Notes under the pieces: generated by a model
Database searches by the model: none
The model's input: the letters and a program-made list of their open reading frames with translations, nothing else
Told to the model about the DNA's origin: nothing
Shown here: in pieces, positions 12,694-30,006 of the stretch
Position numbering within the stretch: position 1 is the stretch's first letter
Layout: each line of letters begins with the position of its first letter
Program-made: the position numbers and the translations under genes
Virus record (IMG/VR): IMGVR_UViG_3300049048_000052
Coordinates: 1 to 64,000 of that record
DNA length: 64,000 bases
Reading direction: 5' to 3' (one strand)

Positions 12694-12902
12694 ATAAGTC
12701 ACATTCAAGGAAGACATATCCAGCTAATAAAGCTGTACCAGTCGAGGAACTAGAGAAGTATAGGAAAGAGATATTCCGTAGGGATGGGGATACATATATA
12801 AAAACATCTCCTACTCCTGAAATACGTAAATGGATTAAGAAGTTTCATATACGTAAGTCAAGGAGATATTATAGGTATGAAGAAGCCCAAGCTGAATATT
12901 AA
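12690..12902 (+). CDS. Small basic hypothetical protein
   Basis: ORF overlapping the dps stop by 4 nt. Confidence 0.55.
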   Translation: MNKSHSRKTYPANKAVPVEELEKYRKEIFRRDGDTYIKTSPTPEIRKWIKKFHIRKSRRYYRYEEAQAEY

Positions 12903-12910
12903 GAAGCTCT

Positions 12911-13558
12911 ATGATTGAACTTAGTTGTTGTATATGTGGGGCAGCTTATAAAGTTAAACCATACAGAGCTAATAACTCAAAGACCTGTTCCAAGATATGT
13001 AGAGATAAATACCTAGGGCTTATATTTAAGGGTTCTGGTGGGCCCTCCTGGAAGGGAGGTAGTTCTAATCGAACTAAAGAGCATAAACGTTGGTCTGCTG
13101 CAGTAATAGAAAGGGACGGCCGCTGTATAGAATGTGGTGCTAATTCCTTATTACAGGCGCATCATGTAGAACATTTCTCTAAATCTATATCGGCTAGAAC
13201 CGATATTAATAATGGCATAACTGTTTGTGTGAGGTGCCACGCTGATAAACACCCCGAATTACCTCGTGCCTTTGTGTTAAGGGAGGGTGGTAAGTCTATC
13301 AAACTATGCCCTCGGTGTGGAAAGCAGTTTGTAGGTGCAAAGGCTAAACAAGTGTATTGCAGTATCAATTGTAGAAGGGAATCTACAAAGACTGGCCATC
13401 TTATAAGATGTGTTATATGTAATAAAGAAGTCTATAAACAAGCTAGGCACAAAGACTTAGGCAAATGTTGCTCTAGAGTCTGTGCTGGGCAATTAGGTAG
13501 GCTTATCAGATATGGCAAGGAAAAAGAAGGAACTGAACATATCCAAAGCGATCCGTAG
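12911..13558 (+). CDS. HNH endonuclease with CxxC zinc-binding repeats
   Basis: RDGRCIECG..LQAHHVEH..DINNGITVCVRCHADKH, flanked by C..C..CS..C repeats. Confidence 0.85.
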   Translation: MIELSCCICGAAYKVKPYRANNSKTCSKICRDKYLGLIFKGSGGPSWKGGSSNRTKEHKRWSAAVIERDGRCIECGANSLLQAHHVEHFSKSISARTDINNGITVCVRCHADKHPELPRAFVLREGGKSIKLCPRCGKQFVGAKAKQVYCSINCRRESTKTGHLIRCVICNKEVYKQARHKDLGKCCSRVCAGQLGRLIRYGKEKEGTEHIQSDP

Positions 13559-13722: not shown

Positions 13723-14136
13723 ATGTATACCTTAGAAGAGTTTTTACTGTTAGATATAGTCAATAGGATAGAGTTGGCTAAGGTTATTAATATAGAGATA
13801 TTGGCTGATGATAAAAGCGAATTATATCTAACCTGGCAAGATAAGCAAGGTAAGGTATATAAGCATGCGATCAAAACTAAGATACTTGGTAATATCGTAC
13901 ATACCTTTGAGACATATGTAGCCACAGAGATGTTAAGACAGGGATATGTTCTAGTACCTATAGAGGGAGGCTTTGAGGTCTATGGAGGTACTGAGATATA
14001 TCAGGTTATGAAAGAAGAATGCACTTGCCCCTATTACATCTACAAGAGGAACAAGTGCATTCACTTGATATTTAAGGATTGGCATATGCAGTATAGACAG
14101 GAGGCCTCTGCATTAAAGAGGAAGTATCACGGCTAA
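13723..14136 (+). CDS. SWIM zinc-finger protein
   Basis: CTCPYYIYKRNKCIHL (CxC-x(n)-CxH). Confidence 0.7.
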   Translation: MYTLEEFLLLDIVNRIELAKVINIEILADDKSELYLTWQDKQGKVYKHAIKTKILGNIVHTFETYVATEMLRQGYVLVPIEGGFEVYGGTEIYQVMKEECTCPYYIYKRNKCIHLIFKDWHMQYRQEASALKRKYHG

Positions 14137-15629
14137 GCAGTCTCTTTAGACTTAGTAGGCCTGGACTTAGACTTAGCTTTAGGGGCAGCACTAACTGGCT
14201 TAGCCGTAGCCGCCTCTTTGATCTTTTTAATATTGGCCTTATCTGCAGCTGTCATTTCCCTTTGAGGTGCAGAGATGATATCTCTATAGTATTGATAATC
14301 TACTTCCTCTTCTAGGTTGAGGCCACCAACTGCTTCTGCTTGGGTTAACACACCTGAGATAGTGGCGACATCAGAGTATCTAAAGGGCTTAGCCGTTATA
14401 GTACCTGAGTCATAAGCTGAGAAGTTATCTCTAGCATCAAAGTTATACTGAATAAGTTGAGCTACGCACTGCTCTAGGAATGAATTGATAACTACCTCAA
14501 AGATAGAGTCAACAAACATATGGAACAGTTCTACTTGTCTTTCAGAGGCGCCCCCAGTACCTAGTCCTTGACTACCATCCTTCATAATGAGGTTGGGTAT
14601 GCTCATACCTCTCATCATATTCTCATCGCACAACTCAATAGCCTGTTGGAATGAGTCAGCGAAGTTATTACCAGTGGTAAGTGCTTCTAGTTTAACCGGG
14701 TGGTCCTTATCTATCTGAGTGAATACAATACCTGTCTCACTCCTCATGTTCTCTAGCTCACGGGCGGCCATCTCGTGTAGAGTGAGATACCTAGTGGTAC
14801 CGTCTAGGTCCTGCATTATCTCATCTGTATTCTGAGGAGGTACTACAGCCCATATAAGAGGCGTACCATATCTATCTAGTGCTATGGCCATCATATCTCT
14901 GAAGGCCTCCTTGAATAGATGATACTTAAGGATGGGAACAAGCACAGAGGTACCGTAAGGGTTATTACCCTCACCACCCAATGAGCAATGGATAACTTTA
15001 GACTTGGGTAGTCTAACCATAGAACCTGTAAAGTTAGGACCTACAGGCCTCTCCTTTGTATAGTAAAGAGGCACAGGTACCCACACACCAGTCAAGTAAT
15101 TGGATGTAGGGATAGCCTCGCCATGGGTTAACCTACCATGTAGATTAAGTTTAAGATCTACTTGACTAGGATGATAACTAATAACGTCCTCTATCCATGT
15201 TTGGTCTATACCATTAGGTCCCTTCTTCTTACCCCATATAATCTCTTGTGTAGAGAAGCCTGACCAGAGACAGTTAACTGTGGCATCATATATCCACTTA
15301 CTAACTCCCTTTAGATTAGCCTGTACAAACTTAGTTATATTCTTATCTGTATGAGAATACTTACCGATCTTAGCTTTAACGGATAGGGCTATCTTACGTA
15401 TCCCATCAAAGATGATAGGCTCGCTGCGTCTAGCATTATCCCAAGCTGCTAACTGATAATAGTGGGGTTTAACTACTGGAGTGAAATATTCACCAGTAGA
15501 GTTATATGCTGTAGCACGTCCCATCTGTCCGAACTCTGCAGGCCTTTTTCTATAGAGGGCTGAGGTTCTTATTGGAGGGGACGTGCTAATGTCTGATGTC
15601 TTTCCCAGGGTTGGGTGTAGGTCTACCAT
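14133..15629 (-). CDS. Portal protein (Mu gp29 / DUF935-like)
   Basis: LPKSKVIH..NPYGTSVL..KYHLFK..MAIALDRYGTP portal signature. Confidence 0.85.
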   Translation of the reverse strand: MVDLHPTLGKTSDISTSPPIRTSALYRKRPAEFGQMGRATAYNSTGEYFTPVVKPHYYQLAAWDNARRSEPIIFDGIRKIALSVKAKIGKYSHTDKNITKFVQANLKGVSKWIYDATVNCLWSGFSTQEIIWGKKKGPNGIDQTWIEDVISYHPSQVDLKLNLHGRLTHGEAIPTSNYLTGVWVPVPLYYTKERPVGPNFTGSMVRLPKSKVIHCSLGGEGNNPYGTSVLVPILKYHLFKEAFRDMMAIALDRYGTPLIWAVVPPQNTDEIMQDLDGTTRYLTLHEMAARELENMRSETGIVFTQIDKDHPVKLEALTTGNNFADSFQQAIELCDENMMRGMSIPNLIMKDGSQGLGTGGASERQVELFHMFVDSIFEVVINSFLEQCVAQLIQYNFDARDNFSAYDSGTITAKPFRYSDVATISGVLTQAEAVGGLNLEEEVDYQYYRDIISAPQREMTAADKANIKKIKEAATAKPVSAAPKAKSKSRPTKSKETA

Positions 15630-16632: not shown

Positions 16633-19600
16633 TTGTTTTCTGAAGAAGAAGAGAAGCGATCTAGTTTAGAGTTATTGATGGGTAGGCTTAGAGGGGAGGA
16701 ATCATCTGATGATGCCCTAAGTCTAGCGGTAAGGCACCACATCTATTATGGAGGTGGTAGTGATAGCTTCATGGCTAGATACAATAGAATGGCGGATGAG
16801 AACCCCTCAGATGAGCCTAGACTCTTTGGAGATCTAAGCACACTTAGCGGTGAATTTGAACTAGATGAGAACTCTCTGAATCAGAGTATAAGAGAAGTAA
16901 CAGCGTACTCTGCATTCTCATCCTTTGATAAGGATATGCAGAATGTATTAGGTAATGGTGCTAATGCTTTAAAGAGATTACATGGTAGGTTCTACTTTGG
17001 TAGTAAGACCCAGGATGCCACCTTTGCATCTAAGAATGTCTACGACACGATATATCGTCCATTCTCTATAGATGCAGATAAAGAAGGATGGACTATAGCC
17101 CCTGAGAGTCCCTTGCATGGTATGCGGGAACATGTCCTCCAAACTATAGTTGATGCTGATGTTAATAGCGGTAGGGGTAACTTCGTTAATATAAGAAGTG
17201 AACTCAATCGTATGGTCCGGGGTAATCTATCTATTAATAAGAAGAACCTGGCACTTATAGATAAAAATACAGACGAAAGAATAGCAGGTATGATAGGTCA
17301 AAAGACCTATGTTAATAGACCCGGCATAGCGCCCTTCTTATCTATGATTCAGGGTGCTGATACTGAGATTGTTATAGATACTTACCAGTTCCAGAATAAA
17401 GCTATATCAGACTATTTATATAACTGGGTAACTAGAAAGGCCTTAGCAGGTGAGACCCCTAGACTGACGATCAGATTAGCTATGCCTAGGGATAAAGGTG
17501 TTGATAGCGCTACTAGCTATGACATTCTTGGACCTAACCTAATACAAATACTCAAGTTCAAACAATTAAAAGAGCAGTTAAATAATGACTTCCCTGATAG
17601 GGATTGGGATGACCTTATTAAGGTAGAGGTTGAGTCTGATGTACACCACTCTAAAATGTACTTCACTGATAGGGCTGCAGCTATAGGCTCCATCAACCTT
17701 ACTAGTCCTGTAGGATATAATCCTAATCAGGCAGGCTCCAACTATGAAATGATGAGAATATTTCATAGTGTAGCCCCTCAAGCTAGTATGGGGGACCTTA
17801 GGTCTGCTCTTACGGATCTTAAGATAAGACATACCTTAGGACTTAATAAGGAACAGTTAAGAGAAGAGTTCCTTTATAGACAGGTAAAAGATCTTAGGGA
17901 GCAAATGGAGAACCGTGTGAGAGGTTCCTCTATGAACTTCACTAATAGGAGAGGCCAACTAGGAATGGGTGGCGACATCTTTGAGCATCTAGAGAAGACA
18001 GTAGAGATGCTGGATGATCCTAGATTTATTGGTAGTAGATTAGGAGACATAATAGCAGGGGGCACTAAGTCTGATAAGTCTAGGGCTCGGTTTGCTAATA
18101 GGTCTGGTAGACTTGAACTCCATATGATACTAGACCAAGTAATGCTATTGCAGCATGCGGATGGTCTATTCAACACTATGGTGGAAGGTGAATTTGGTAG
18201 GTTCTCAGATGATCAGCTATCTAGGATGGATAGTACTGGAGCTAGGAGGGCAAGATATAAGAGGGTACAAAGTAAAGTATTACGTGCCCTTGCTGATAAT
18301 AGAGCGTTTATTGTAGCTGATGCTAGAAATCTAAGAGAGGGTGTTATAGATCCTCTTATGTTTGGTGCCTATGATGAGAGAACTGGTACTAATAGAGGAC
18401 CCCTAATAGCTAGAGAGGTATGGGAGCAGCACGACTATGACATAGCTAAGCTAGCTAGGAAGGCTACAGGATCAAGTGTTGATGAGAGGGTGTTATCCCT
18501 TAGTAACCAGTTCGGATTCTCTAATGAGACTTCACTCCAAGTACTGGCATTGGCTAGTGGAAATATTAGGGCTGCAGGTGTTCCTAGACAGCACGTTAAA
18601 GCTTATAGCCTGATGGCTAGATTGGATGATAGGAAGGGGGCCCCTAATCTAGTAGCACTAAGCTCCTATATGGGTAGCTCCAACTTGGGTCTATATTCAT
18701 CCCCTATGAGGGGTATTGATGACCTAGGCTCCTCTATGGACTCTGATCATCTTAGCCATGAAATTGGTCTAACTATGATGATGGGTCAGGTTAGATCCAT
18801 GATGGACTTCAATACTACTAGTGAGTATGCACTCAGCAGTAGTCAAGAATATGTTGAGATGCAGAGGTACTTCCTACCTAATTGGAGCTTAGCTATGAGT
18901 CAATTAGGGGTGTCAGCTATAGAGAATAAGAACTTCATGGAGGTCCGTAGCAGGAGTCTATGGGAGGGTAACGTTGATAGTAAATCTCTAGTAGGACTGA
19001 GAGATGGCATCCATAATATGATGCGCTCTATGAAGATAGACGAATCTGTATACAGTATAGGTACTGTAACAGATGGATCTAGCCAAAAGGTTATAGGTCT
19101 AGAACTTAGTTTAGATGCTAGGGCCTTAGCTGGCTTTGGTAAAGGCTTTGAAGGTCTACATGGTGAGAGCCGTAGGATAAGTTATAGATTCACTACCCTT
19201 AAAGGGGCGGGTGCTGATCCTATGGTCTATGCAATAGATCAAGGTAAGATTATTGGCAGATCTTTATTTGTTAATAATAGTGATGTAGAACTACCTATTC
19301 TAGATAGGACTATACAAAGTAAGTCCAGTACAGTACTTAACTCTATAGATAATACTTTAGCCTTCATAGCTACCCTAGCTGCGGAGGTAACACATAGAGC
19401 GCTTATAGATAAACCTCGTAAGACATTTGAATCCTTAGATGGCAAGGCGCAGAGAGTAGCCATAGGAGATTACCTAGCTCGTCTTGCGGGTATTAGAGGC
19501 GGTCAATTAGAGGGTCTTTATAATACTGATGTCCTAACTGATGAACATGCTCTCAAGTTAGCGGAGGAGATTAATAAACGTCTGCTCTATGGTAATGAGA

Positions 19601-22600
19601 GTATGAAGCGTGCAGCAGCATTGGCTGGTATAGATTATTCTCAGCAGGCTAGAGCAAAAGATGTTAATACATTAGTTGCTAGTATACAAAGTCTAGCTAA
19701 GGAAGCTGAAGCTATTGCAGTACACAGGAAATTAGATAAGAGTGGATATCGTAGGGCACAGCTGATAGGTTCAGGTGGTACCTCAATCATAGATCAGATG
19801 ATGTCCATGATTACAGAGAAGGGATATGCTGATCTACTCTTAGACGTAGTTAGTCATACTAATGGTATGGACTATTACAGTTCTATGTCTGCTGATATAG
19901 AAAAGGTTAAGAAAATGCTTATGGAGCCTTTTCTTACTTTTGGTCAGCATAATATATATGGTTCCTCTCAGTCTTACTTTAGATTGGGAGTAAGGGGTGT
20001 GTCTAATGCACCTCAATATAGGGATGCTATAAGTATGGCTAGGGAGGGTAATCCTATGGCCGCCTATGCACTACCTTCCTTAGCACTAACTTATGGACCT
20101 ACTACCAATCTAAGGGCTAATGGGCTTATTAGAAGTATTGCTGATAAGTCATCTATTAACTTTGGAGTGGGAGAGGGCCTAAGCTTCTTTAACACTCCTA
20201 CTCAAGTCGTGGGTGATGTAACCAGTGCTGAGATATTATCGTTCCTCTCTGTAGGTAGTCTTGTAAGAAGAGAGGAAATAGAGAACTATATTAAGTCTGT
20301 AGATCCTAAGGCTAATACTCAGGCTCTACTTAGTAAGGCATTTGGGGATAGTCAGGAGATGTTCTCCTTCACCTTTGATACGGTTAAGAAGGTAGCACAG
20401 GTACCTCAGAGACTTAAGAATGCTGTAGGTGCTAGACCCTTATACGATATAAGTGAGAATGCTCAGAGGGTATTAGAAGATCCTATGAGTGGTGAGGCAG
20501 CTACCTTAGGTAGAGATTATGTATGGAAGCTAAGGGAAGAGCTAAAGCTTCACTTCCGTAGACAGATAAATATAGACCTTGTAACTGATGAGGTAACTAG
20601 AGCAGCCCTTGAGAGGGAGATGGAAAACAAGATAGATGCTCTAGTACAACCTGATATGGATATCGGGGCTTACTTTGGTGGTCAGATAAGAAGGATACTG
20701 TCTCAACCTTTAGCTGAACTCGTTAAGAGGGAGAGAGATGAGATAGAACAGCTCTTAGGTACTGAGGTTAATACTAGTACTATAGGATCTGAATTACTTA
20801 GAGTAAGAATGCTAAGGGCTGATATGTATGGCAGCTCTTATAGAGGTGTTATAGGAGGATCTAGAAGGCATGGTGCCCCAGTGGCCCTCGTACAGCTAAC
20901 AGGCGGTTACTCTGATTACTTCTATGCTAACCCCATGTTTGGGGGGTCCCAAGGTATGAGACAAGGTCTCTTAGAGAGAGCAGAGAAGAGAGTCAAGGCT
21001 TCTATGTTATCTACTGATTGGCAGGAGAAGACAGGTGTTCTTATTCAGCCTGGTTATACTATTAGACTAGATAAGAAGACTGGTACTGCATCAGTATTTG
21101 ATGAGAGGGGTAATTGGGTAAGGGCTATAGATAGCAGGGATCAGATGGATGCTATTGAGAAAGTAGTAGAGAATACTGATATTAATGGCTTACCCTCCTT
21201 TGCCAACGTACAGGCTACATCTAGTAACAGATTGGGTGAGGATAGTGTTGAACTAATATTAAGATTCGAACAACAGAGTCCTGCCTCTGTTGATAAATAT
21301 CAGATGAACTTCGAAGCCACCTATGTAAGAAGTATTAAACCTGGGGGTGGTCGAAGGGTTGAAGGTAACTGGGCCGGTGCGCTGGTTAAGGGCGTAGCTG
21401 TCTTTACTAGACATGATAATGAGTACTCCTTCTTTGGTGGAATACTGGATCAATTGAATCAAATGCCTACCACAACGTTTGGTGGTCAGTTGGACATAAG
21501 GAATGTATTCGGTCTACTTAGCCCTGCTAACCTTAAGTCCTTTGTTTATGGACATGGTGCTGAACTGCTAACTGATAACCGTAAGAGAACTGGCTTGCTT
21601 AATGCCTATAATGATGCTGCGGTTACCAGTGGGAGTGCTGAAGCTGAGAGAGTAAGTAAGAGATTAGCAGCTGCTATACTCTTAGGTTTTGGTACCTCTA
21701 TGATAGAGAGTAGTGCCGAGGCCAATGCTATTAAGCAGAATCTATATAGGGCCGCAGCTCAGGGGGAATTGGGTGAGTACTTCCAAGGTGTGGCAGCAGC
21801 TACGGGACTGCTAGAGTTTAAGGATGAACGTGGTCAGGTTATGGATGCGGCTAGTGTATTTACTAGTGAGGCGTCCTTCAAGGTTGCTCAGACACCTCTA
21901 CTAGCTGCCATTACATCTGAGGATATAATGCAGGCCATTAATGGATCTGGGGGTAGACTGTTTGATAAGTTAAGCACTGCTATTACTAATGCAGCTAAGG
22001 AGGCTGAGGGTACTGGCTATATGGTAGCTGGAGACTTCAGACATCAACAAGCAGGCATATTACTTACAGCGTTAGATATATTTGATCAGCTATCCGTACA
22101 GGTTGATAGGAAGAGAGGACGTAACCTTGTTACTCTGCCTACTGACTTTAATGTTAAGAATGCATCTGTTAGAGCTCAGCTAGCGGCTATAGTAGGTATG
22201 GGCCTTAATGATATGGAGGATGAGACTAAGGTAGAGAATATACTGGGTAGTATGCTTAGTAAGGCACCAGTGTTAAGACTATTCATGGATCTATCTTTCT
22301 CTCACTCTAAGGAACCTGTAAGTACTAAGATGACCGGTAAGCTTGAAATGCAGCACCTCATTAAGCCCCTACAGATGTTAGCGGGTGAGTTTGCTGATAA
22401 TAAGAGCTTGGATAAGATGAGGGTCACCATAGCCAACATGTTCGCTGCTATTAGCCACGGCTCTCTGTATCAATATGTAGCCGCAGGGGACTTACCTAGT
22501 AAGAATACAATTGTAGATATAACTGATCCCTTTGTCAGGACTCCAATGTTCAAACAGAGAATGTTGGGTATATATGGCACAGGGCTACATACGGATAAGT

Positions 22601-25600
22601 TCGAGCAGCTTAGGAAGGAGTACGGACAATATACTGAGGAACTACAAGTCCTCATAAGAGATAAGACAGTATCAGCTGATAGACATGAGGTCAAGGTCAT
22701 AATGACTAAGCTGGCTACTGTACAGGGTCAACTTTTAGAGCTGGCTAGATATTACCAACTGTTTGAGGATAAACCTGCCTCGGTTGGTATATCTAATGCA
22801 GTAGTAGGGGCCATGAATAATCCTAGATTTGGATTCTTTGTGCCCTACATGGAACCTATCATGTCTGAACATGGCGTCATCCTTAAGGTAGATAAGACTA
22901 GAGGTTTCTATAGCTTTATGCCATCTGGAGATGACATAAGACTAATGGGGGCCCAGTTTGGTAATTATATAGACCGTATAGTTCAAGCAACTATAGTGCT
23001 GCAATCAGGCTTTGCTCCTGGAGGACCCCTAGATGATATGTTTACTCGCATGTCTAAGATTAGGGGAAGTACCCATATAGCTATGAGTAATGAAGAATGG
23101 CAGCATCTGGATAGATTCTATAAGACAGCCCTTGAGATGCCTGCCCTATTAGCTGATGCTGCCTCAGGTACTAGGTTACAAAGAGCAACTGGTGCTGCCA
23201 TACCCTTTAGAGGTGGAGTGAGTACCCCTGCGGCCTCTGGTTTAGTACCTCCTGAAATGGTGGTGCTTGCTAGTGAGACATTAGCTAAACATGGCCTTAG
23301 AGTATCTGAGACTAAATGGAGAATGTTAGAGGATACTGATGCAGAGATGTCCAGAACTCATAGCACTCTCCAGAGTCTTGCTTATGAGTCTATGTCTCAG
23401 GCCGATAAGAACATAATAGAGAATAAGAGAAAGTTCCTAACAGGTCAGAGATTCGCATTAACTGAGGGTTTATCTGAACAGGGTACCAAGGGTCTACTAG
23501 ATAGGGCCCTAAAGGAAAGCCGTGAGCTAGCAGAAGACTATAGCAATGCGATGACCTTTACTGACCTGAAAGAAAGACAGAGACATCTAGGTAAGGTCTT
23601 TGGTAGGGCCGATCGTATGGCTAGACGTTTCAGCACTACTGTCTATGATCTGAATAAGAGAGGGGACTCCTTCGCTCAGCTGGCCGCCATCAGTGAGATG
23701 GAAATATGGAAGTCGCAGGCTAGAATATCTAGTCTAGAGGCACAGAACCAGGTAACTCCATTATCAAGTAAGGCTGCTGAAATACTAGATGCTGAAAGGA
23801 ATCAGCTCCGTATGTTTAAGGAGCTACCCTTCTATGTAACCAACTTTACCTTGGGTAGTGCTAACTCTGCCAGGAAAACTATGGAGGTTAGCCACCTAGC
23901 ACTTGAGGGTAAGCTAAGAGGTAATATTGTTAGAAGCATAATGTCTGCTGATATTACTAAGGAGATATTCGAGCTGGATGCAGATCACAGGACAGACTTC
24001 CTTGATTATAAGTTAACTACTCTAATAGATCATCTGGAGACTGCTAATGCTAAGAGGGATAATCCTGGTCCTCATGTGAAAGAAAGTGTTAGAGCTATGA
24101 GGAGTAGCCGTCTAGGAGGTGAGGCGGATTATAATAATCGTTTAGCTAGTAGGCTCGTAGATATTAGGGATAGGGTTAGAAGGGGTGGTACTAAGACGGC
24201 TGATGTCCTGGCTGAGATCAATGCTGCTTATGCTATGTATGACGTAAGTGGCGTATCATCTGCTATAGGCTTCCGTTCTCCTCCCTTTGGTTCTACTGAG
24301 CCCCAATTACAGATACTAGATGTCCTAAGGGATATAGCGGTAGTGAATGAGTATGCCCAAGGTATTGATGGGGGTAGTGGTAGATTAATCCAATACAGTG
24401 GGGCTGATGAGAGAAATGCATCATTGACCCTACTAAGTCCTATATCTATCCTAACTATGAACTTGGGTGACTTTGATGGTGACCCTTATACATTCATATT
24501 CTCTGAGCTACAAGGGTTAGAGCATAAGGTGATGGAGAAGAAGGATAATATTAAGATGCTCCAGTTTAGAAGGTCTAAGTGGAGTAAGGAACTATCACGC
24601 TTAGAACCAGATACCTTGGATTACGAAGATCTGAAGACTAGGGTTGATAATACTGAGAAACAGATCCTAAAGAATGAGGAGGAGATACCAAGGATCAGAT
24701 TAAAGATTAAGGAGATGGATGAACATCTACAAAGAGATATTATAGATAAGGGTGTGGCCCATAAACAGGTCGCGGCCTATATGGGTATCAATGCTAAATA
24801 CTTATTAACTGAGAGTCAGGGTGGTTATCTGGCTGACTCTGATAAATTAGATGCTAATGTCTTGTTCACCTTTATTGAACAGGGTAGAGGTTTGTATCCT
24901 GGTATAGATGATAAATATAAGAGTATCGATACACTCTACAAAGCCTTAGATCGACTCATAGAACCTACCTCCATGAGTGGGCCTATGAACCTTAATATGC
25001 ACCTATCTAGTATAGAAGCCCTAAAGAGTAGGGCCGCTGAGCTAGCTCAGGATATGAGTGATAACAGTGGTGGGGTATACGAACGTATTATCAATAACAA
25101 TGAGGTAGCTAGCGCGGTATTTGCGGAGTTACAGAACTTTGTTAATACTTATGAGGATTCAACCTCAGTTGAGATTGAGGACTACAAGTCAGGCTTAGCA
25201 GATCAGACTGTCAGCATGTACTATAAGATGCTTGGCACTAATGAGTTCCAGAAGATGATGAAGAGGGCTGGGGGAACTCAGATGGAGCTCTCCACGTATG
25301 ACATGCTAACAAAGGTCTTGGGTAAGGCGGGTGGTGATATCCTTGGTAAGACCTATAACTCTATAGTAGGTACTCTATTCGCTGATAGTCCTATGTTGGC
25401 AGTGGGTCATGTACTGACTAGGAGTGATGAGGTTAGCTCTGGGGTTGAGCAATATATAGATAATCTTATAAATACAGGTAAGTTAAGCGGAGATGAATGG
25501 TCTACCGGGGCCGACTTTATAGAGAATATAAAGACTAGTATGTCTAATGCAGAGCAGCTACAGGGATTCATGAAAGATATCCAGCAGCTACTCAGAGATA

Positions 25601-27786
25601 GTATTAAGTTAAAGGGTGGTACTAATATTCTTAGTGCTTTGAGAGATAAGGCTCAACAATATGAGGATCCCAACCTAGACGATGCAGGTAGAACAAGGGT
25701 TCTAAATGACATTGTTAAGGATATAGGTCCAGGACCTGGTCTCAAGTCATTAATGAGGCTTGATAGCTTTGTTAATAATATTAATGGTAGTATCTCTGAC
25801 TTTGAGTTAGCAGATGAGTTTGGAGTGTCCAAACTCGGGGATGAGTACGCATATATAACAGGAACTCTACAGGCAGCTGATCTTATTAATGAATCAGACC
25901 CCACTAAGGCTTATAGGACTAATAAAATGGTAGCCGCCTATAAGACTGTTAGAGATATCCAGCATATGGTTACTGCTTTTAACTTCGAGAGAGGTAGCAG
26001 TAGCAAGCAGTTCATGGATAACTTTATAAGGGTAGAGGAGAGAAGGGGCCAAAAGGATGTAATACTAGATAAGTTTAGAAATAGGAGTAATGCTGAGTTT
26101 GGTGAGTATAGTAGAGCATTAGCATCTTACAACGATGATGATCTTACTCCTAAGCCTAATGATAGCTATGATGATAGATTAACTGCTTTTGAGCAGAAGT
26201 ATGGAGAGTCTGGGCTGCTATTGTTCGCACATATGTATGAACAAAGCAAGGCTGGAACTAGAGGAGTCTTTGGAGAGTTCGGTCAGAACTTACTAGCCTT
26301 TGCACATAAGGATAGTATCAGGAAGACTCTAACTAATGTTATGGAAGGAAGATCAGAGACTATAGCAATGCCTGCCACTATGGATCAGGATATATTCACC
26401 TCTGATATAACCTTAACCCTAATGAACCTGGCCTCTACTAATAAGCTGGATCCTTCAGCCGCAGCCTTATTCTATCAGAGTATGGAAGGTCTCCTTAAGG
26501 TAGGGGGTATAGCATCAGATCCTAAAGATGTGTTGATGAATATCCTATCCTCTACCACTAGGAACAATAATGGTAATGAGGCTGCTACTAAAATAAGTGC
26601 TCAGATAGGGGCTCTTAATATGTTAGAACAAGAGGGCAGTGAGTTTAGACTTACCTTTAGTCAAGGTGGGCAGGAACATACTGCTATCTATAGCAGCCTC
26701 TTGGATTATCTACAGCAGTCCCTTACTGAAACAAGGGCAGGTCTAGAGAGTAAGATGATCCAAAGCTTCGTGAAGACTATTATTAATGATGGAGTATCTA
26801 GTGGTAGAAAGCCTAAGAATGCTAGAGAGTTCGCTACCTATATTCTTAAACCTAAGGGTTCGGATTCAGATACTGAGCCTGATGAGGCTATGATTACTAA
26901 GATAGTTGAGAATATAGAATCTATGTCCGAAGTAGATTCTATATTTAAGGAGAATGTTAGTACTAAACCTGTTCTAGAAGGCAAATATGCTGAGGTAGCC
27001 CGTAAGAGTATTAGTCGTATGGCTAGTGAGGATAAAGCCAATACTATGGACCTAATACTACCGGCATTCTTAAGTATTATGGGTCAAGCCATTGCTAGTG
27101 GATCTGTTGAACCTGAGGCTTTTCAAGATGTTGTTGGTTCTACGTTAGTGGCCGCAGCATACAGTAGACCTAACTTTGGTTCTAGGACTGCTACTGGTTT
27201 TATGGCTAATGTAGGTATAGGAAGTGCATTCAAATTCAGGATGGCAATTAATGAGGCGGGTGGGGATCCTGGTGAAGGCATAACCAGACTTATAGCTAGA
27301 GAACTAACCTTTAACGCAATAAGCGCTTGGGCTGCACCTAAGCTCACTAACCTAATGACTCAAAAGCTATTCGGAGCTAGACCTCAAACCCTAGATAGGG
27401 ATTACCATGAGGGTAGTAGGAACGTAGCAGGTATGATGAGTGGTGCAGTACTATCAGCCGCACTAGGAGTACTAGGAGGTAACGTAGCCTCTGGTGTTGT
27501 AGGAATGATGAGCACTGTACCTACTGCTAATCTAGTGGATACTGCGCTTGATTATATAGCAGTTAAAGCCAGAGCTATAGGAGCTCAAACGTTCCTAGAG
27601 GAATCTGATGCTATTAATATATTTAATGAGGAAGATGGAGAGTCTGTAGATGCAATATACTCAGATGAACCTATATCTTTCTATGGATCTAATCCTCAAT
27701 CCTTAGCAGAGGCTGTATATACGGATAACACTATGGATACTATTGTGGTGGAGCCCGTCAATTTGTTTGAGGATTATGATTCTTAG
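16633..27786 (+). CDS. Giant 3717-aa protein: tandem PLD domains plus two-barrel RNA polymerase centre (candidate virion RNAP)
   Basis: H339xK341xxxxD346..GSIN and H654xK656..GSSN PLD motifs; FRSPP about 65 aa before MNLGDFDGDP (D2613-D2617, nt 24469-24483); TTG start with GAGGGG SD. Confidence 0.75.
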   Translation: MFSEEEEKRSSLELLMGRLRGEESSDDALSLAVRHHIYYGGGSDSFMARYNRMADENPSDEPRLFGDLSTLSGEFELDENSLNQSIREVTAYSAFSSFDKDMQNVLGNGANALKRLHGRFYFGSKTQDATFASKNVYDTIYRPFSIDADKEGWTIAPESPLHGMREHVLQTIVDADVNSGRGNFVNIRSELNRMVRGNLSINKKNLALIDKNTDERIAGMIGQKTYVNRPGIAPFLSMIQGADTEIVIDTYQFQNKAISDYLYNWVTRKALAGETPRLTIRLAMPRDKGVDSATSYDILGPNLIQILKFKQLKEQLNNDFPDRDWDDLIKVEVESDVHHSKMYFTDRAAAIGSINLTSPVGYNPNQAGSNYEMMRIFHSVAPQASMGDLRSALTDLKIRHTLGLNKEQLREEFLYRQVKDLREQMENRVRGSSMNFTNRRGQLGMGGDIFEHLEKTVEMLDDPRFIGSRLGDIIAGGTKSDKSRARFANRSGRLELHMILDQVMLLQHADGLFNTMVEGEFGRFSDDQLSRMDSTGARRARYKRVQSKVLRALADNRAFIVADARNLREGVIDPLMFGAYDERTGTNRGPLIAREVWEQHDYDIAKLARKATGSSVDERVLSLSNQFGFSNETSLQVLALASGNIRAAGVPRQHVKAYSLMARLDDRKGAPNLVALSSYMGSSNLGLYSSPMRGIDDLGSSMDSDHLSHEIGLTMMMGQVRSMMDFNTTSEYALSSSQEYVEMQRYFLPNWSLAMSQLGVSAIENKNFMEVRSRSLWEGNVDSKSLVGLRDGIHNMMRSMKIDESVYSIGTVTDGSSQKVIGLELSLDARALAGFGKGFEGLHGESRRISYRFTTLKGAGADPMVYAIDQGKIIGRSLFVNNSDVELPILDRTIQSKSSTVLNSIDNTLAFIATLAAEVTHRALIDKPRKTFESLDGKAQRVAIGDYLARLAGIRGGQLEGLYNTDVLTDEHALKLAEEINKRLLYGNESMKRAAALAGIDYSQQARAKDVNTLVASIQSLAKEAEAIAVHRKLDKSGYRRAQLIGSGGTSIIDQMMSMITEKGYADLLLDVVSHTNGMDYYSSMSADIEKVKKMLMEPFLTFGQHNIYGSSQSYFRLGVRGVSNAPQYRDAISMAREGNPMAAYALPSLALTYGPTTNLRANGLIRSIADKSSINFGVGEGLSFFNTPTQVVGDVTSAEILSFLSVGSLVRREEIENYIKSVDPKANTQALLSKAFGDSQEMFSFTFDTVKKVAQVPQRLKNAVGARPLYDISENAQRVLEDPMSGEAATLGRDYVWKLREELKLHFRRQINIDLVTDEVTRAALEREMENKIDALVQPDMDIGAYFGGQIRRILSQPLAELVKRERDEIEQLLGTEVNTSTIGSELLRVRMLRADMYGSSYRGVIGGSRRHGAPVALVQLTGGYSDYFYANPMFGGSQGMRQGLLERAEKRVKASMLSTDWQEKTGVLIQPGYTIRLDKKTGTASVFDERGNWVRAIDSRDQMDAIEKVVENTDINGLPSFANVQATSSNRLGEDSVELILRFEQQSPASVDKYQMNFEATYVRSIKPGGGRRVEGNWAGALVKGVAVFTRHDNEYSFFGGILDQLNQMPTTTFGGQLDIRNVFGLLSPANLKSFVYGHGAELLTDNRKRTGLLNAYNDAAVTSGSAEAERVSKRLAAAILLGFGTSMIESSAEANAIKQNLYRAAAQGELGEYFQGVAAATGLLEFKDERGQVMDAASVFTSEASFKVAQTPLLAAITSEDIMQAINGSGGRLFDKLSTAITNAAKEAEGTGYMVAGDFRHQQAGILLTALDIFDQLSVQVDRKRGRNLVTLPTDFNVKNASVRAQLAAIVGMGLNDMEDETKVENILGSMLSKAPVLRLFMDLSFSHSKEPVSTKMTGKLEMQHLIKPLQMLAGEFADNKSLDKMRVTIANMFAAISHGSLYQYVAAGDLPSKNTIVDITDPFVRTPMFKQRMLGIYGTGLHTDKFEQLRKEYGQYTEELQVLIRDKTVSADRHEVKVIMTKLATVQGQLLELARYYQLFEDKPASVGISNAVVGAMNNPRFGFFVPYMEPIMSEHGVILKVDKTRGFYSFMPSGDDIRLMGAQFGNYIDRIVQATIVLQSGFAPGGPLDDMFTRMSKIRGSTHIAMSNEEWQHLDRFYKTALEMPALLADAASGTRLQRATGAAIPFRGGVSTPAASGLVPPEMVVLASETLAKHGLRVSETKWRMLEDTDAEMSRTHSTLQSLAYESMSQADKNIIENKRKFLTGQRFALTEGLSEQGTKGLLDRALKESRELAEDYSNAMTFTDLKERQRHLGKVFGRADRMARRFSTTVYDLNKRGDSFAQLAAISEMEIWKSQARISSLEAQNQVTPLSSKAAEILDAERNQLRMFKELPFYVTNFTLGSANSARKTMEVSHLALEGKLRGNIVRSIMSADITKEIFELDADHRTDFLDYKLTTLIDHLETANAKRDNPGPHVKESVRAMRSSRLGGEADYNNRLASRLVDIRDRVRRGGTKTADVLAEINAAYAMYDVSGVSSAIGFRSPPFGSTEPQLQILDVLRDIAVVNEYAQGIDGGSGRLIQYSGADERNASLTLLSPISILTMNLGDFDGDPYTFIFSELQGLEHKVMEKKDNIKMLQFRRSKWSKELSRLEPDTLDYEDLKTRVDNTEKQILKNEEEIPRIRLKIKEMDEHLQRDIIDKGVAHKQVAAYMGINAKYLLTESQGGYLADSDKLDANVLFTFIEQGRGLYPGIDDKYKSIDTLYKALDRLIEPTSMSGPMNLNMHLSSIEALKSRAAELAQDMSDNSGGVYERIINNNEVASAVFAELQNFVNTYEDSTSVEIEDYKSGLADQTVSMYYKMLGTNEFQKMMKRAGGTQMELSTYDMLTKVLGKAGGDILGKTYNSIVGTLFADSPMLAVGHVLTRSDEVSSGVEQYIDNLINTGKLSGDEWSTGADFIENIKTSMSNAEQLQGFMKDIQQLLRDSIKLKGGTNILSALRDKAQQYEDPNLDDAGRTRVLNDIVKDIGPGPGLKSLMRLDSFVNNINGSISDFELADEFGVSKLGDEYAYITGTLQAADLINESDPTKAYRTNKMVAAYKTVRDIQHMVTAFNFERGSSSKQFMDNFIRVEERRGQKDVILDKFRNRSNAEFGEYSRALASYNDDDLTPKPNDSYDDRLTAFEQKYGESGLLLFAHMYEQSKAGTRGVFGEFGQNLLAFAHKDSIRKTLTNVMEGRSETIAMPATMDQDIFTSDITLTLMNLASTNKLDPSAAALFYQSMEGLLKVGGIASDPKDVLMNILSSTTRNNNGNEAATKISAQIGALNMLEQEGSEFRLTFSQGGQEHTAIYSSLLDYLQQSLTETRAGLESKMIQSFVKTIINDGVSSGRKPKNAREFATYILKPKGSDSDTEPDEAMITKIVENIESMSEVDSIFKENVSTKPVLEGKYAEVARKSISRMASEDKANTMDLILPAFLSIMGQAIASGSVEPEAFQDVVGSTLVAAAYSRPNFGSRTATGFMANVGIGSAFKFRMAINEAGGDPGEGITRLIARELTFNAISAWAAPKLTNLMTQKLFGARPQTLDRDYHEGSRNVAGMMSGAVLSAALGVLGGNVASGVVGMMSTVPTANLVDTALDYIAVKARAIGAQTFLEESDAINIFNEEDGESVDAIYSDEPISFYGSNPQSLAEAVYTDNTMDTIVVEPVNLFEDYDS

Positions 27787-28082
27787 AGCTTTAACTTAGT
27801 CAATAAAGTCTTTATCATCTTGAGGGGTACTATATTAAGACTGGCTACTATAGTAGAAGGATAACCCGGTACCGTGTTTGAGCTTAATTCAAGTAGCTTA
27901 CCTTCCTTGTCATATAGAGAGAATCTGCATTCTACTGTACTCCCTATAGTCTCTTGGGGGAGTTCAAAGTCCTTGAACTCTAGAGGCTCGTTTGCCTTAA
28001 CTAATTGTGCAAACAGTATAGTAGGTAAAATGGTAACTTCGTAGATTAGAATGTAATCTTCTAAGGGATTGGGCCTACTCAT
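27783..28082 (-). CDS. Hypothetical protein
   Basis: Overlapping-operon ORF. Confidence 0.55.
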   Translation of the reverse strand: MSRPNPLEDYILIYEVTILPTILFAQLVKANEPLEFKDFELPQETIGSTVECRFSLYDKEGKLLELSSNTVPGYPSTIVASLNIVPLKMIKTLLTKLKL

Positions 28083-28350
28083 ATATTGACTGACTATCCT
28101 TGTATGTAAAAGAGAATGAGGTTATACCTTTCTGTAATAGTATAGAGGATATTATCGAGGCTATGTCCAAAACATCATGCCAGTCCTCATACTCTATGAG
28201 TAGAACAAAGTACTCCTCATAGTTCTCTTTTACCTCTACTGCTATGTAGGTATCTATATTATTTAGTACCTCTTCTAAAGCAATGGGTAGATCACCAGTA
28301 GACTGAATGTCCTCTACTGTGATATAGGCTTTATCAAATAAATTACTCAT
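28075..28350 (-). CDS. Hypothetical acidic protein
   Basis: Overlapping-operon ORF. Confidence 0.55.
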   Translation of the reverse strand: MSNLFDKAYITVEDIQSTGDLPIALEEVLNNIDTYIAVEVKENYEEYFVLLIEYEDWHDVLDIASIISSILLQKGITSFSFTYKDSQSIYE

Positions 28351-28373
28351 TGTGTATTCGTTTGGTTGTTGTG

Positions 28374-28637
28374 TTATTTGGTGTACCCAATCTTCTTTAG
28401 AATGGAACCTATTAATAATTGTAGTACATATAAGTTAGCGGCCCAGTTATAGCCCACGCCTTTCCTAGTTCTACGTATAAGGGATGTGCGAAAGGTTCTA
28501 AGGTGTATAGATTCCTCTAGATAGAAGAGATCTATAAGGAATTGTATTGTCTCCCTAGGGGTCATTCCTAGTTCACTGGATATACTATCTAGTTTGTCCT
28601 TATATGTATCGGTAAGTGAGATTCTTGTTCTATACAT
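28374..28637 (-). CDS. Possible ribbon-helix-helix (CopG-like) DNA-binding protein
   Basis: RTRISLTDTYKDKLDSISSELGMTPRETIQFLI pattern. Confidence 0.5.
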   Translation of the reverse strand: MYRTRISLTDTYKDKLDSISSELGMTPRETIQFLIDLFYLEESIHLRTFRTSLIRRTRKGVGYNWAANLYVLQLLIGSILKKIGYTK

Positions 28638-28639
28638 AT

Positions 28640-29734
28640 TTATGTGAGGGAGAAGTTTTGACCTTCCCTACCATTATAGTTTTCCATGTACTTAGGAGGT
28701 ACTCCTGTATTCCAGAAGTTGGACATGAGACCTGATTGACCTGGAGGTAACCATAGGGCACTCCCTGTTACCGTAGCAGGATGAACTAATATCTCAGGCT
28801 CTTGATCCATTTCTGCAGGTTGCACTACCCTAGAGACTTCCTTACCAAAGAATTCTACCTTTGCATTGGTAGGGGCAGTAGAAGTAGGTCCGGGCCAGGT
28901 GATTTGTAGGTAGGGCTTATGTAGAGTTATTAGGCCACTAACAGGAACCCCATTAGTGTCAGTTGGGGAGGACTTCATTAGTATGGTAAATGGGTGATCA
29001 GATGTCACCTGGGCCGCTACCGCTTTACCGCCAAATACTTGTATGGAATAGGGCACAGGTAAATTACCCCATTGTTTACATGTAATAGTAAGGGTGTCAT
29101 TAGCAGGGTTACGATTGAAACCTCCAGGAGGTGGTGGACCCGGTGGATCAGCCTCTGGTGTAACTACAGTACTTCCTACTTGAAACCCAGGAGGTCTACC
29201 TGTAGTAAGAGGATCAATACCAGGATCCACGGCTGGCATAGCTATAGGGCAACTAGGATTAGTAGAACGTAATCCGCTAACTTGAAGGATATCATAAGGC
29301 CTGTCCCATCTGACCTCCCCTATCTTCTCACCTGTAAATGAGATGGCTAAGTAGAAACGATTACGGCTATACTCCCACTTGCGGAAGTAGTCATGCGTCT
29401 CAGTATTACTAGAGTAGAACTCATGTTCAGTAAACTTAGTCAGCAGTTGGTAATAATTCGTACCAGCATACTCCTCTTCAAACCTACCTAGATCAACTAG
29501 ATCTAAACGATCGTCATCGTTATTGGTAAACTCAAGGGATGAGAATGTACGTGCATAAGGCGTACCGTCCTGTAGGGCTAATTGGCTGGATACTTCCCAG
29601 TCTGACTTTAGCTGTCCTACATGCACATTAAAGGCGGCCCTGGTCATAGTACTGGGACCACTAGAACTAAAGGAAGGCATCCCAGGTAAACTGGGTTCGT
29701 CTACCTGGGGTAAGCTGAATTTATCTAAGGTCAT
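28640..29734 (-). CDS. Probable baseplate-associated protein
   Basis: Follows PAAR gene; Pro-rich linker and beta-rich C-terminus. Confidence 0.4.
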   Translation of the reverse strand: MTLDKFSLPQVDEPSLPGMPSFSSSGPSTMTRAAFNVHVGQLKSDWEVSSQLALQDGTPYARTFSSLEFTNNDDDRLDLVDLGRFEEEYAGTNYYQLLTKFTEHEFYSSNTETHDYFRKWEYSRNRFYLAISFTGEKIGEVRWDRPYDILQVSGLRSTNPSCPIAMPAVDPGIDPLTTGRPPGFQVGSTVVTPEADPPGPPPPGGFNRNPANDTLTITCKQWGNLPVPYSIQVFGGKAVAAQVTSDHPFTILMKSSPTDTNGVPVSGLITLHKPYLQITWPGPTSTAPTNAKVEFFGKEVSRVVQPAEMDQEPEILVHPATVTGSALWLPPGQSGLMSNFWNTGVPPKYMENYNGREGQNFSLT

Positions 29735-29736
29735 GA

Positions 29737-30006
29737 TTAATCATCTATAAATGTATCTTTTGAGGATGTCATTATCTTACCGCATACCACCTTATCCTTC
29801 CGACGTACTATTGGTCTGCTATCACAGAACCTCCTCTTACTCCCAGTTATAATGGGGCCTGGTACAGTCTTATCTAGAAGACGTGCTAGACCCCTGCTGT
29901 TAACAAAGGTAGTACGAGAGGCAGTGAGCACGGGACCTGATGGTACAAGGGGCTCACATATAGATTGCACCTTATCTAAGAGACGTACAGCACCTAAACC
30001 GAACAT
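29737..30006 (-). CDS. PAAR-repeat tail spike tip protein
   Basis: Three repeats AVRLLD / LARLLD / IVRRKD with GPVLTAS..VN, GPIITGS..CD, GKIMTSS..ID. Confidence 0.8.
   Translation of the reverse strand: MFGLGAVRLLDKVQSICEPLVPSGPVLTASRTTFVNSRGLARLLDKTVPGPIITGSKRRFCDSRPIVRRKDKVVCGKIMTSSKDTFIDD

What the first reader, a model, noticed from the sequence alone, without database searches (positions are those of the whole stretch)
26900..27786. Gly/Ala-rich hydrophobic C-terminus suggests tape-measure or ejection function in the same polypeptide
Seen: segments such as VAGMMSGAVLSAALGVLGGNVASGVVG and ILPAFLSIMGQAIASG, plus adjacency to the chaperone gene. Established: P23-45 gp96 fuses an RNAP to the tail tape measure. 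Inference: one protein may measure the tail, span the membrane and transcribe.
Basis: inference. Interest (0 to 1): 0.6.

Follow-up and report, generated by a model that had tools for sequence, protein, structure and literature searches.

The report
Conserved hydrophobic tail of giant phage protein
The flagged stretch is the conserved, helix-rich C-terminal end of a 3,717-residue protein of a jumbo contractile-tailed phage related to Microcystis phage Ma-LMM01; it looks like an anchoring or ejection module of a head-associated giant protein that also carries an RNA-polymerase-like metal-binding motif, not like a tail tape measure.

Summary
The two quoted hydrophobic segments are real. They lie at aa 3475-3490 and 3598-3624 of one 3,717-aa ORF (window 16633-27786, +).

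In this single sequence their hydrophobicity is modest and no more than shuffles give. What makes them real is conservation. A profile of the last ~300 residues finds 50 cluster representatives among 1.84 billion proteins. In every full-length hit (3,462-5,372 aa) the module sits at the extreme C-terminus, with two uncharged small-residue-rich helices at fixed distances from the end and an acidic final 70 residues.

All full-length members also carry one GD[FYWL]DGD motif, and most carry an N-terminal HKD (PLD-like) motif.

The tape-measure reading is not supported:
- The gene always lies beside the Mu-type portal gene, outside the sheath/tube/baseplate block.
- No tape-measure family matches it, and no chaperone gene is recognisable next to it.
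- The module has a fixed length, worth at most about 45 nm of tail.
- Better candidates exist elsewhere in the genome (1,112 aa and 2,961 aa), though neither is proven.

An ejection or membrane-anchor role is plausible but unproven. RNA polymerase identity rests on the motif only; sequence and fold searches were inconclusive.

The parts
16633..27786 (+). Giant ORF of 3,717 aa (P0001), a member of the Ma-LMM01 gp080 family. The first in-frame start is TTG at 16633. The true start is uncertain; a Met lies at aa 16.
   Evidence: ORF list and translation. PHROG phrog_31006, E 1.7e-147. tblastn to Ma-LMM01 gp080 and My-WqHQDG.
17644..17703 (+). HKD (phospholipase D superfamily) signature HxKx4Dx6GSxN, at aa 338-357.
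   Evidence: Motif read directly. Weak Pfam PLDc_2 match over aa 236-359, E 0.011, below the cut-off. An HxKxxxxD motif is found near the N-terminus in most full-length relatives.
24274..24291 (+). Conserved R-x-x-P-x-G block (aa 2548-2553), 65 residues upstream of the acidic motif. It may correspond to the R-x-P of the beta-prime-like barrel.
   Evidence: R and G are invariant and P nearly invariant in 32-35 relatives.
24466..24483 (+). GDFDGD motif (aa 2612-2617), the candidate Mg-binding catalytic loop.
   Evidence: D, D, G, D are invariant in all aligned relatives. hhalign to the beta-prime NADFDGD loop gives P 3e-4 and probability 39%.
24508..24741 (+). Long helical hairpin directly after the motif (aa about 2626-2703).
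   Evidence: AF2 model residues 715-792, pLDDT about 83-91. This hairpin dominates the fold and profile searches as coiled-coil noise.
27010..27783 (+). Conserved C-terminal module (aa about 3460-3717), all alpha-helical. This is the object of the finding.
   Evidence: The profile finds 50 representatives, always at the C-terminus. AF2 gives an all-helix model with mean pLDDT 66 and pTM 0.38. No PDB fold match.
27052..27108 (+). Hydrophobic helix 1 (aa 3474-3492), with conserved P3477, G3484 and G3490.
   Evidence: Kyte-Doolittle mean 1.63. Column conservation: P in 43 of 47, G 96%, G 100%.
27421..27507 (+). Hydrophobic helix 2 (aa 3597-3625). It has a small-residue zipper at 3600/3604/3608/3612/3616 and almost no charged residue (two isolated cells in the 48-sequence alignment) in family columns 3597-3616.
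   Evidence: Kyte-Doolittle mean 1.73. Gly/Ala/Ser fraction 0.77-0.98 at every fourth position across 48 sequences. 39-residue uncharged run.
27574..27783 (+). Acidic C-terminal tail (last 70 aa, net charge -17), predicted disordered.
   Evidence: Net charge is -8 to -20 in all 48 relatives. pLDDT is below 50 from model residue 317.
14133..15629 (-). Mu-type portal gene. It is transcribed divergently from the giant gene, with two small genes between them.
   Evidence: Pfam Portal_Mu, E 2.9e-24. The same arrangement is seen in L011, L012 and L013.
27783..30006 (-). Conserved convergent cluster: three small genes (99, 91 and 87 aa), a 364-aa gene and a PAAR gene (29737-30006).
   Evidence: ORFs. 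PAAR_motif, E 4.9e-16. The same order occurs in distant relatives. No chaperone family match.

Best explanation
Nucleotides 26900-27786 encode the family-defining C-terminal module of a giant multidomain virion protein of a jumbo myophage related to Ma-LMM01.

The domain order is: HKD/PLD-like domain, a long variable region, a core with R-x-x-P-x-G and GDFDGD motifs that is probably a two-barrel nucleotide polymerase, a helical hairpin, and then a module of about 260 aa. That module consists of two conserved small-residue-rich hydrophobic helices separated by amphipathic helices, followed by an acidic disordered tail.

Proposed mechanism:
- The protein is assembled into the head near the portal, whose gene is always adjacent.
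- It leaves through the tail tube at infection.
- Its C-terminal helices then pack with each other, with partner proteins or with lipid. This holds the enzyme at the entry site on the cytoplasmic membrane, as proposed for the hydrophobic N-terminal domain of N4 gp50.
- It does not set tail length.

Shown here: the sequence features, their conservation, the fixed C-terminal position, the gene context, and the absence of tape-measure family signals.

Inferred: virion packaging, ejection, membrane association, and polymerase activity.
For: - The module is found only at the extreme C-terminus of giants of 3,462-5,372 aa, or in fragments.
- In 47 of 48 members an uncharged run of 18 or more residues starts 110-136 residues from the end. 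The tail is acidic in 48 of 48.
- A small-residue pattern recurs every fourth position, and specific Gly and Pro residues are invariant. This points to defined helix packing rather than composition alone.
- Every full-length member carries one GD[FYWL]DGD motif 998-1,355 aa from the C-end. The part N-terminal of that motif varies from 2,173 to 4,173 aa.
- Synteny is kept down to the most distant members: capsid protein, Mu-type portal, two small genes, giant, three small genes, a gene of about 365 aa, PAAR.
- The sheath, tube and baseplate genes form a separate block.
- There is a precedent for a giant ejected polymerase anchored to the membrane by a hydrophobic terminal domain: N4 gp50 (PMC13434306).
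- P23-45 gp96 also has hydrophobic segments about 70-110 aa from its C-end.
Against: - There is no experimental or proteomic evidence that this protein, or Ma-LMM01 gp080, is in virions.
- Hydrophobicity is marginal (Kyte-Doolittle 1.6-1.7; approximate insertion energy +3 to +4.7 kcal/mol). It is not above shuffled controls in the single sequence.
- The AF2 model of the module is of low confidence (pTM 0.38) and has no fold match. The helices could simply be the core of a soluble domain.
- A second giant protein in the same genome (P0004) has far stronger membrane-type segments and could carry the membrane function instead.
- Polymerase identity is not established. There is no significant profile or fold match. 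The beta-like invariant Asp and Lys residues were not located.
- Published work on Ma-LMM01 describes sigma-70-like promoters for all gene classes.
Confidence: 0.5

Rival explanations
1. One reading: the C-terminal part is a tail tape measure fused to the polymerase, as in P23-45 gp96. It would lie in the tail lumen, set tail length, and then form the membrane channel.
For: - Fusion of a polymerase to a tape measure has a precedent (PMC10770324).
- No Pfam- or PHROG-labelled tape measure was found anywhere in the tail block of this genome.
- The module is all alpha-helical with Gly/Ala-rich hydrophobic helices.
- A PAAR spike-tip gene lies in the conserved cluster just downstream.
Against: - The gene lies beside the portal and is separated from the sheath and tube genes by head genes in all relatives.
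- No upstream same-strand chaperone pair exists.
- No tape-measure family match and no similarity to gp96.
- The module has a fixed length of about 250-300 aa, worth at most about 45 nm at 0.15 nm per residue. The whole protein would predict about 560 nm, against a 260-nm tail in MaMV-DH01.
- Family length variation is N-terminal of the DFDGD motif, not in the C-terminal part.
- Better-placed (P0003, 1,112 aa, about 167 nm) and better-composed (P0004) candidates exist.
Confidence: 0.1
2. The module is a soluble helical domain whose hydrophobic helices form its buried core or an oligomer interface. It would serve capsid targeting, portal docking, or self-inhibition of the enzyme, as the C-terminal domain of N4 gp50 does, without ever entering a membrane.
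For: - Insertion energy is marginal, and the hydrophobicity is not above shuffles.
- Specific Gly, Pro and Tyr residues are invariant, which is typical of a defined fold.
- The best-predicted helices are the amphipathic pair between the hydrophobic ones.
- The N4 C-terminal domain regulates the polymerase (PMC13434306 abstract).
- The portal gene is always adjacent.
Against: - The AF2 model is not compact (pTM 0.38) and matches no soluble fold.
- A family-wide stretch of 20 or more residues with almost no charged residue, with a small-residue zipper, is more typical of membrane or channel helices.
Confidence: 0.3
3. The hydrophobic segments are chance composition in a very long protein and have no specific role.
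For: Shuffles of the protein give two or more segments above the same threshold in 81% of trials.
Against: The positions, the lack of charge and the small-residue spacing are kept in 47-48 relatives at about 20-25% identity. The module is detectable as a profile at E down to 1e-120.
Confidence: 0.03

Closest known systems
Microcystis phage Ma-LMM01 gp080 (3,562 aa; PHROG phrog_31006, function unknown) and homologues in MaMV phages and Microcoleus phage My-WqHQDG
   Same: - Same family, E 1.7e-147 to the PHROG.
- Same HKD and GDFDGD motifs.
- The C-terminal module aligns at 27% identity.
- Same neighbourhood: head genes on one side, small genes on the other.
   Different: - Only about 27-33% identical in the C-terminal 800 aa.
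- In Ma-LMM01 the second hydrophobic helix is weaker.
- The host genome here is a 252-kb jumbo phage, against 162 kb for Ma-LMM01.
Thermus phage P23-45 gp96, a virion RNA polymerase fused to the tail tape measure (PMC10770324)
   Same: - A giant single polypeptide with a DFDGD motif.
- No sequence similarity to cellular polymerases beyond that motif.
- Hydrophobic segments, including one about 70-110 aa from the C-end.
   Different: - gp96 is encoded in the tail block of a siphovirus with an 800-nm tail and is annotated as the tape measure, with a metallopeptidase domain.
- Its polymerase is N-terminal.
- Here the gene is next to the portal of a myovirus, the motif lies in the C-terminal third, and no profile similarity exists.
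Coliphage N4 gp50 virion RNA polymerase (PMC13434306)
   Same: - A head-packaged, ejected enzyme of about 3,500 aa.
- Beads-on-a-string domains.
- A hydrophobic terminal domain proposed to anchor it to the inner membrane.
   Different: - N4 gp50 is a T7-like single-subunit polymerase.
- Its hydrophobic domain is N-terminal.
- The phage is a podovirus with separate channel-forming proteins gp51 and gp52.
- No sequence relationship was seen.
crAss-like phage phi14:2 gp66 and Neurospora QDE-1 (single-chain two-barrel polymerases)
   Same: - An acidic DxDxD-type catalytic motif in a large virion protein.
- 2 of 35 family segments weakly hit Pfam RdRP PF05183, the QDE-1 family, at E 0.12.
   Different: - No significant sequence or fold match was obtained.
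- The beta-like barrel invariants were not located.

Membership tests
Tail tape measure protein | Encoded in the tail block, between the tube or chaperone genes and the hub or baseplate genes | tested here: not met
   The gene lies beside the Mu-type portal. The sheath (1889-4384, -), the tube (1-534, -) and the baseplate genes at the contig end form a separate block. Relatives show the same arrangement.
Tail tape measure protein | Preceded by a tail assembly chaperone gene pair on the same strand | tested here: not met
   No same-strand gene lies upstream; the two nearest genes are on the opposite strand. No neighbour matches a chaperone family. A frameshift signal was not searched for.
Tail tape measure protein | Match to a tape-measure sequence family | tested here: not met
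   Pfam and PHROGs scans of the whole protein give no tape-measure family. The C-terminal profile has no similarity to P23-45 gp96.
Tail tape measure protein | Length proportional to tail length (about 0.15 nm per residue, from established knowledge of lambda gpH) | tested here: inconclusive
   The tail length of this phage is unknown. The module (250-300 aa) would give at most about 45 nm and the whole protein about 560 nm. The MaMV-DH01 tail is 260 nm. The C-terminal part keeps a nearly constant length across the family.
Tail tape measure protein | Located in the tail tube lumen | not testable with these tools
   This needs cryo-EM or proteomics of tails.
Two-barrel RNA polymerase (eight invariant residues of PMC2919709) | DxDGD triad in the beta-prime-like barrel | tested here: met
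   GDFDGD lies at aa 2612-2617. D, D, G, D are invariant in 32-35 relatives.
Two-barrel RNA polymerase (eight invariant residues of PMC2919709) | Invariant Arg and Pro (R-x-P) upstream in the same barrel | tested here: inconclusive
   The window protein has R2548-S-P2550-P2551. In the family R is invariant, but the conserved Pro is at R+3, not R+2.
Two-barrel RNA polymerase (eight invariant residues of PMC2919709) | Beta-like barrel with one invariant Asp and two basic residues about 5-8 apart | tested here: inconclusive
   A beta-like R-x5-G-N-K pattern occurs in only 5 of 32 members and not in the window protein. Other nearly invariant residues (K2047, R/K2228, D2345) could not be mapped.
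Two-barrel RNA polymerase (eight invariant residues of PMC2919709) | Double-psi beta-barrel fold, or a significant profile match | tested here: inconclusive
   The AF2 model has pLDDT below 50 at the motif. Foldseek and VIA find only helical hairpins. Profile against PDB, PF00623 in the genome, and hhalign against gp96 were not significant. hhalign against beta-prime gives 39% and P 3e-4, while the validated gp96 control scores only 4.7%.
Ejected membrane-anchoring virion proteins (N4 gp50 N-terminal domain, T7 gp16 type) | Helices able to span or enter a membrane | tested here: inconclusive
   Kyte-Doolittle means are 1.63 and 1.73, with uncharged runs of 19 and 39 residues. The approximate insertion energy is +3.0 to +4.7 kcal/mol, against -0.8 for P0004. 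No dedicated membrane-helix predictor was available.
Ejected membrane-anchoring virion proteins (N4 gp50 N-terminal domain, T7 gp16 type) | Present in the virion and released at infection | not testable with these tools
   No virion proteome of this phage group was found in the papers that could be read.
Ma-LMM01 gp080-like giant proteins (phrog_31006) | Sequence match, shared motifs, shared C-terminal module and shared gene context | tested here: met
   E 1.7e-147; motifs; C-terminal profile; synteny.

The most novel reading that the evidence does not exclude
Ma-LMM01-like cyanophages and their jumbo relatives are described in the literature as lacking any RNA polymerase. They may nevertheless carry a previously unrecognised lineage of giant virion-borne two-barrel polymerase. 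It would be fused to a PLD-like domain and to a dedicated C-terminal glycine-zipper membrane anchor, delivered through a contractile tail to transcribe the first genes at the entry site.
Probability: 0.3. Interest if true: 0.75.

Novelty: new variant of a known kind. Interest (0 to 1): 0.5.

Why it matters
The family of Ma-LMM01 gp080 has stood as 'hypothetical' since 2006. Papers on these bloom-controlling cyanophages state that they encode no RNA polymerase and rely on host sigma-70 promoters.

Suppose the GDFDGD core is an active polymerase and the C-terminal module anchors it at the membrane. This would then be a further, independent example of a giant enzyme injected with the genome, after N4, crAss-like phages and P23-45, and here in contractile-tailed phages. 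It would change how early transcription in these phages is read.

For the narrower claim the result is mostly corrective. A hydrophobic Gly/Ala-rich end in a giant phage protein is not enough to call a tape measure. Gene context and family-wide length behaviour argue against it here.

Tried and rejected
- **Near-identical DNA in phage records:** none found.
- **Word-based protein search with the C-terminal region:** found only the query itself.
- **PDB sequence searches:**
  - The single sequence of aa 2000-3000 and the family profile returned only coiled-coil noise.
  - PDB sequence searches with P0002, P0003 and P0004 found nothing useful.
- **Fold searches:**
  - Foldseek on the C-terminal model had a best E of 0.93.
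  - Foldseek and VIA-wide on the 1,151-residue core model were dominated by the helical hairpin.
  - The model is too large and too weak at the barrels for a verdict.
- **Other polymerase tests:**
  - PF00623 was not found in the phage genome.
  - hhalign of the family against gp96 aligned the motif only.
  - hhalign against E. coli beta found nothing.
  - The beta-like basic-loop pattern looked promising by eye but holds in only 5 of 32 members.
- **Protein-atlas look-alikes for P0003 and for the C-terminal module:** scores of 0.85 or less, leads only. The weak Gp5_OB and Phage_base_V lead for P0003 was not pursued.
- **The tape measure of this phage:**
  - It could not be positively identified. 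P0002 (626 aa) and the 447-aa and 226-aa proteins look unlike tape measures.
  - P0003 fits by position and length.
  - P0004 fits by composition.
- **Original Ma-LMM01 papers (PMC2258655, PMC1392944):** not held. My recollection of a 170-nm Ma-LMM01 tail is therefore unverified and is not used as evidence.

Full report
**What the window is.** The window is the first 64 kb of a single 251,780-bp virus contig. No near-identical phage record exists.

The proteins identify a contractile-tailed phage distantly related to Microcystis phage Ma-LMM01 (Fukuivirus) and Microcoleus phage My-WqHQDG:
- tail sheath at 1889-4384 (-);
- major capsid protein at 9158-10486 (-);
- Mu-type portal at 14133-15629 (-).

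The tube gene runs off the start of the window. The tail and baseplate block continues at the other end of the contig, so the record is permuted.

**The observation.** The finding lies in the last 295 codons of one ORF, 16633-27786 (+), of 3,717 aa. Both quoted peptides are present exactly, at aa 3475-3490 and 3598-3624. They are the only two places in the protein where a 19-residue hydropathy mean exceeds 1.5.

Taken alone this is weak evidence:
- Shuffles of the protein reach the same level twice or more in 81% of trials.
- Gly is not enriched over the region; Ala and Val are.
- Only the 39-residue uncharged run is unusual, at P about 0.014.
That is marginal for an autonomous membrane helix.

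**Conservation shows the feature is real.**
- tblastn and alignment show the same C-terminal layout in Ma-LMM01 gp080 and in My-WqHQDG at 27% identity.
- Three further loci came from viral contigs.
- A profile of the module, searched against 1.84 billion representatives, returned 50 proteins. In every full-length one (3,462-5,372 aa) the match ends at the C-terminus; the short hits are fragments.
- Across 48 aligned modules, an uncharged run of 18 or more residues starts about 110-136 residues from the end in 47. Most also have one starting about 215-265 from the end. The last 70 residues carry a net charge of -8 to -20 in all.
- Helix 2 keeps small residues at every fourth position (3600, 3604, 3608, 3612, 3616; Gly/Ala/Ser fraction 0.77-0.98), and almost no charged residue occurs in columns 3597-3616.
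- Helix 1 keeps P3477, G3484 (96%) and G3490 (100%), followed by G3502 and Y3510.

This is a defined packing surface, not mere composition. AF2 with this alignment gives an all-helical, non-compact model (mean pLDDT 66, pTM 0.38) with no PDB fold match.

**The rest of the polypeptide.** Every full-length relative has one GD[FYWL]DGD motif, here GDFDGD at aa 2612-2617. It lies 998-1,355 aa from the C-end, while the part before it varies from 2,173 to 4,173 aa. An invariant Arg and a nearly invariant Pro (R-x-x-P-x-G) lie 65 residues upstream. Most members have an HKD signature near the N-terminus, here at aa 338-357, with a weak Pfam PLDc_2 match.

**Is it a two-barrel RNA polymerase?** This could not be settled.
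- Not significant: the PDB profile search, PF00623 in the genome, hhalign against gp96, and Pfam scans of 35 segments (2 weak RdRP hits at E 0.12).
- The AF2 core model is poor exactly at the motif, and fold searches return only the helical hairpin that follows it.
- The beta-like Asp and Lys invariants defined in PMC2919709 were not located.
- As calibration, hhalign of the family against 81 beta-prime sequences gives probability 39% (P 3e-4) over the catalytic loop. The experimentally validated P23-45 gp96 gives only 4.7%. These methods therefore cannot see a known member either.

I put polymerase identity at roughly 0.6.

- In the window, in Ma-LMM01, and in relatives down to E 1e-5, the gene sits between the portal (divergent, with two small genes between) and a convergent cluster. 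That cluster has three small genes, a gene of about 365 aa and a PAAR gene. All of this is apart from the sheath/tube/baseplate block.
- There is no same-strand upstream gene, and no neighbour matches a chaperone family.
- No tape-measure family matches the protein, and the module has no similarity to gp96.
- At 0.15 nm per residue (established for lambda gpH) the module could span at most about 45 nm and the whole protein about 560 nm. MaMV-DH01, which has a homologue of this protein (the sister phage MaMV-CH02 encodes one of 3,560 aa), has a 260-nm tail.

A labelled tape measure was not found anywhere in the genome. Two candidates fit better than this C-terminus:
- P0003 (1,112 aa) lies just upstream of the gp25-like and J-like baseplate genes. 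Only its C-terminal 140 aa are conserved with Ma-LMM01 gp098.
- P0004 (2,961 aa) lies next to the terminase. It has a staphylococcal-nuclease domain and very hydrophobic Gly/Ala-rich segments.

**Most likely mechanism.** The module is the conserved end-piece of a head-associated, ejected giant enzyme. After passage through the tail tube, its two small-residue-rich helices pack with each other, with partner proteins or with lipid, and hold the enzyme at the entry site.

The closest functional precedent is N4 gp50. Its hydrophobic N-terminal domain is proposed to anchor the ejected polymerase to the inner membrane (PMC13434306). The acidic tail may serve packaging or portal contact.

The main rival is a soluble helical domain used for capsid targeting or self-inhibition. 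The marginal hydrophobicity and the low-confidence model leave this open. Packaging, ejection, membrane contact and catalysis are all inferred.

**Novelty.** The family exists in databases only as hypothetical (phrog_31006). Papers on this phage group state that no RNA polymerase is encoded and describe host-type promoters. No paper found links gp080 to a polymerase.

The object is best filed as a new variant of the known kind 'giant virion enzyme delivered with the genome'. The specific tape-measure claim is not supported.

Noticed in passing
outside the window: G000:C1:204303-213188 (-), locus L009 4303-13188: A second giant ORF (P0004, 2,961 aa). It has an N-terminal staphylococcal-nuclease domain (Pfam E 9e-14) and very hydrophobic Gly/Ala-rich segments at aa 2521-2556 and 2614-2666 (Kyte-Doolittle 2.1-2.3). 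It is a homologue of Ma-LMM01 gp120 and lies next to the large terminase gene. It is a stronger candidate than the flagged protein for a membrane-spanning ejection protein or a tape measure.
   Followed up: partly
window 17644-17703 (+): A canonical HKD signature (HxKx4Dx6GSxN) of the phospholipase D superfamily lies in the N-terminal part of the giant protein and is kept in most relatives. It could be a nuclease or a lipid-cleaving domain. Both giant proteins of this phage thus start with a nuclease-like domain.
   Followed up: partly
window 24466-24483 (+): An invariant GDFDGD motif in a phage group that the literature describes as lacking any RNA polymerase (MaMV-DH01 paper). Polymerase identity is unproven.
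   Followed up: yes
window 28640-30006 (-): A PAAR spike-tip gene (29737-30006, Pfam E 4.9e-16) and a 364-aa gene of unknown function lie in a cluster that is always convergent with the giant gene, even in the most distant relatives. It is unexplained why a tail-tip gene is kept here, away from the baseplate block.
   Followed up: partly
window 1-534 (-) and contig end (L004): The contig is circularly permuted. The tube gene runs off the start of the window, and the tail and baseplate genes continue at the far end of the 251,780-bp record. No chaperone pair lies between the tube gene and the next gene.
   Followed up: yes
outside the window: L004 14693-18008 (-): The baseplate block carries three wall- or lipid-degrading activities in a row: a baseplate protein fused to a GDSL lipase, an amidase, and a protein with an N-terminal endolysin-like region (PHROG match) and a C-terminal M23 peptidase domain.
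   Followed up: no
window 12118-13558 (+): A Dps/ferritin-like DNA-binding protein gene (12118-12693) and an HNH endonuclease gene (12911-13558) are inserted between the head genes on the opposite strand. A ferritin-family gene sits at the same place in relative L011.
   Followed up: no
window 41819-46660 (+): A third large ORF (1,613 aa) is a homologue of Ma-LMM01 gp064 (phrog_30979, function unknown). It has a hydrophobic segment at aa 58-78 (Kyte-Doolittle 1.91).
   Followed up: no
window 16633-16680 (+): The first in-frame start of the giant ORF is TTG at 16633, and a Met codon follows at aa 16. The true start was not determined.
   Followed up: no
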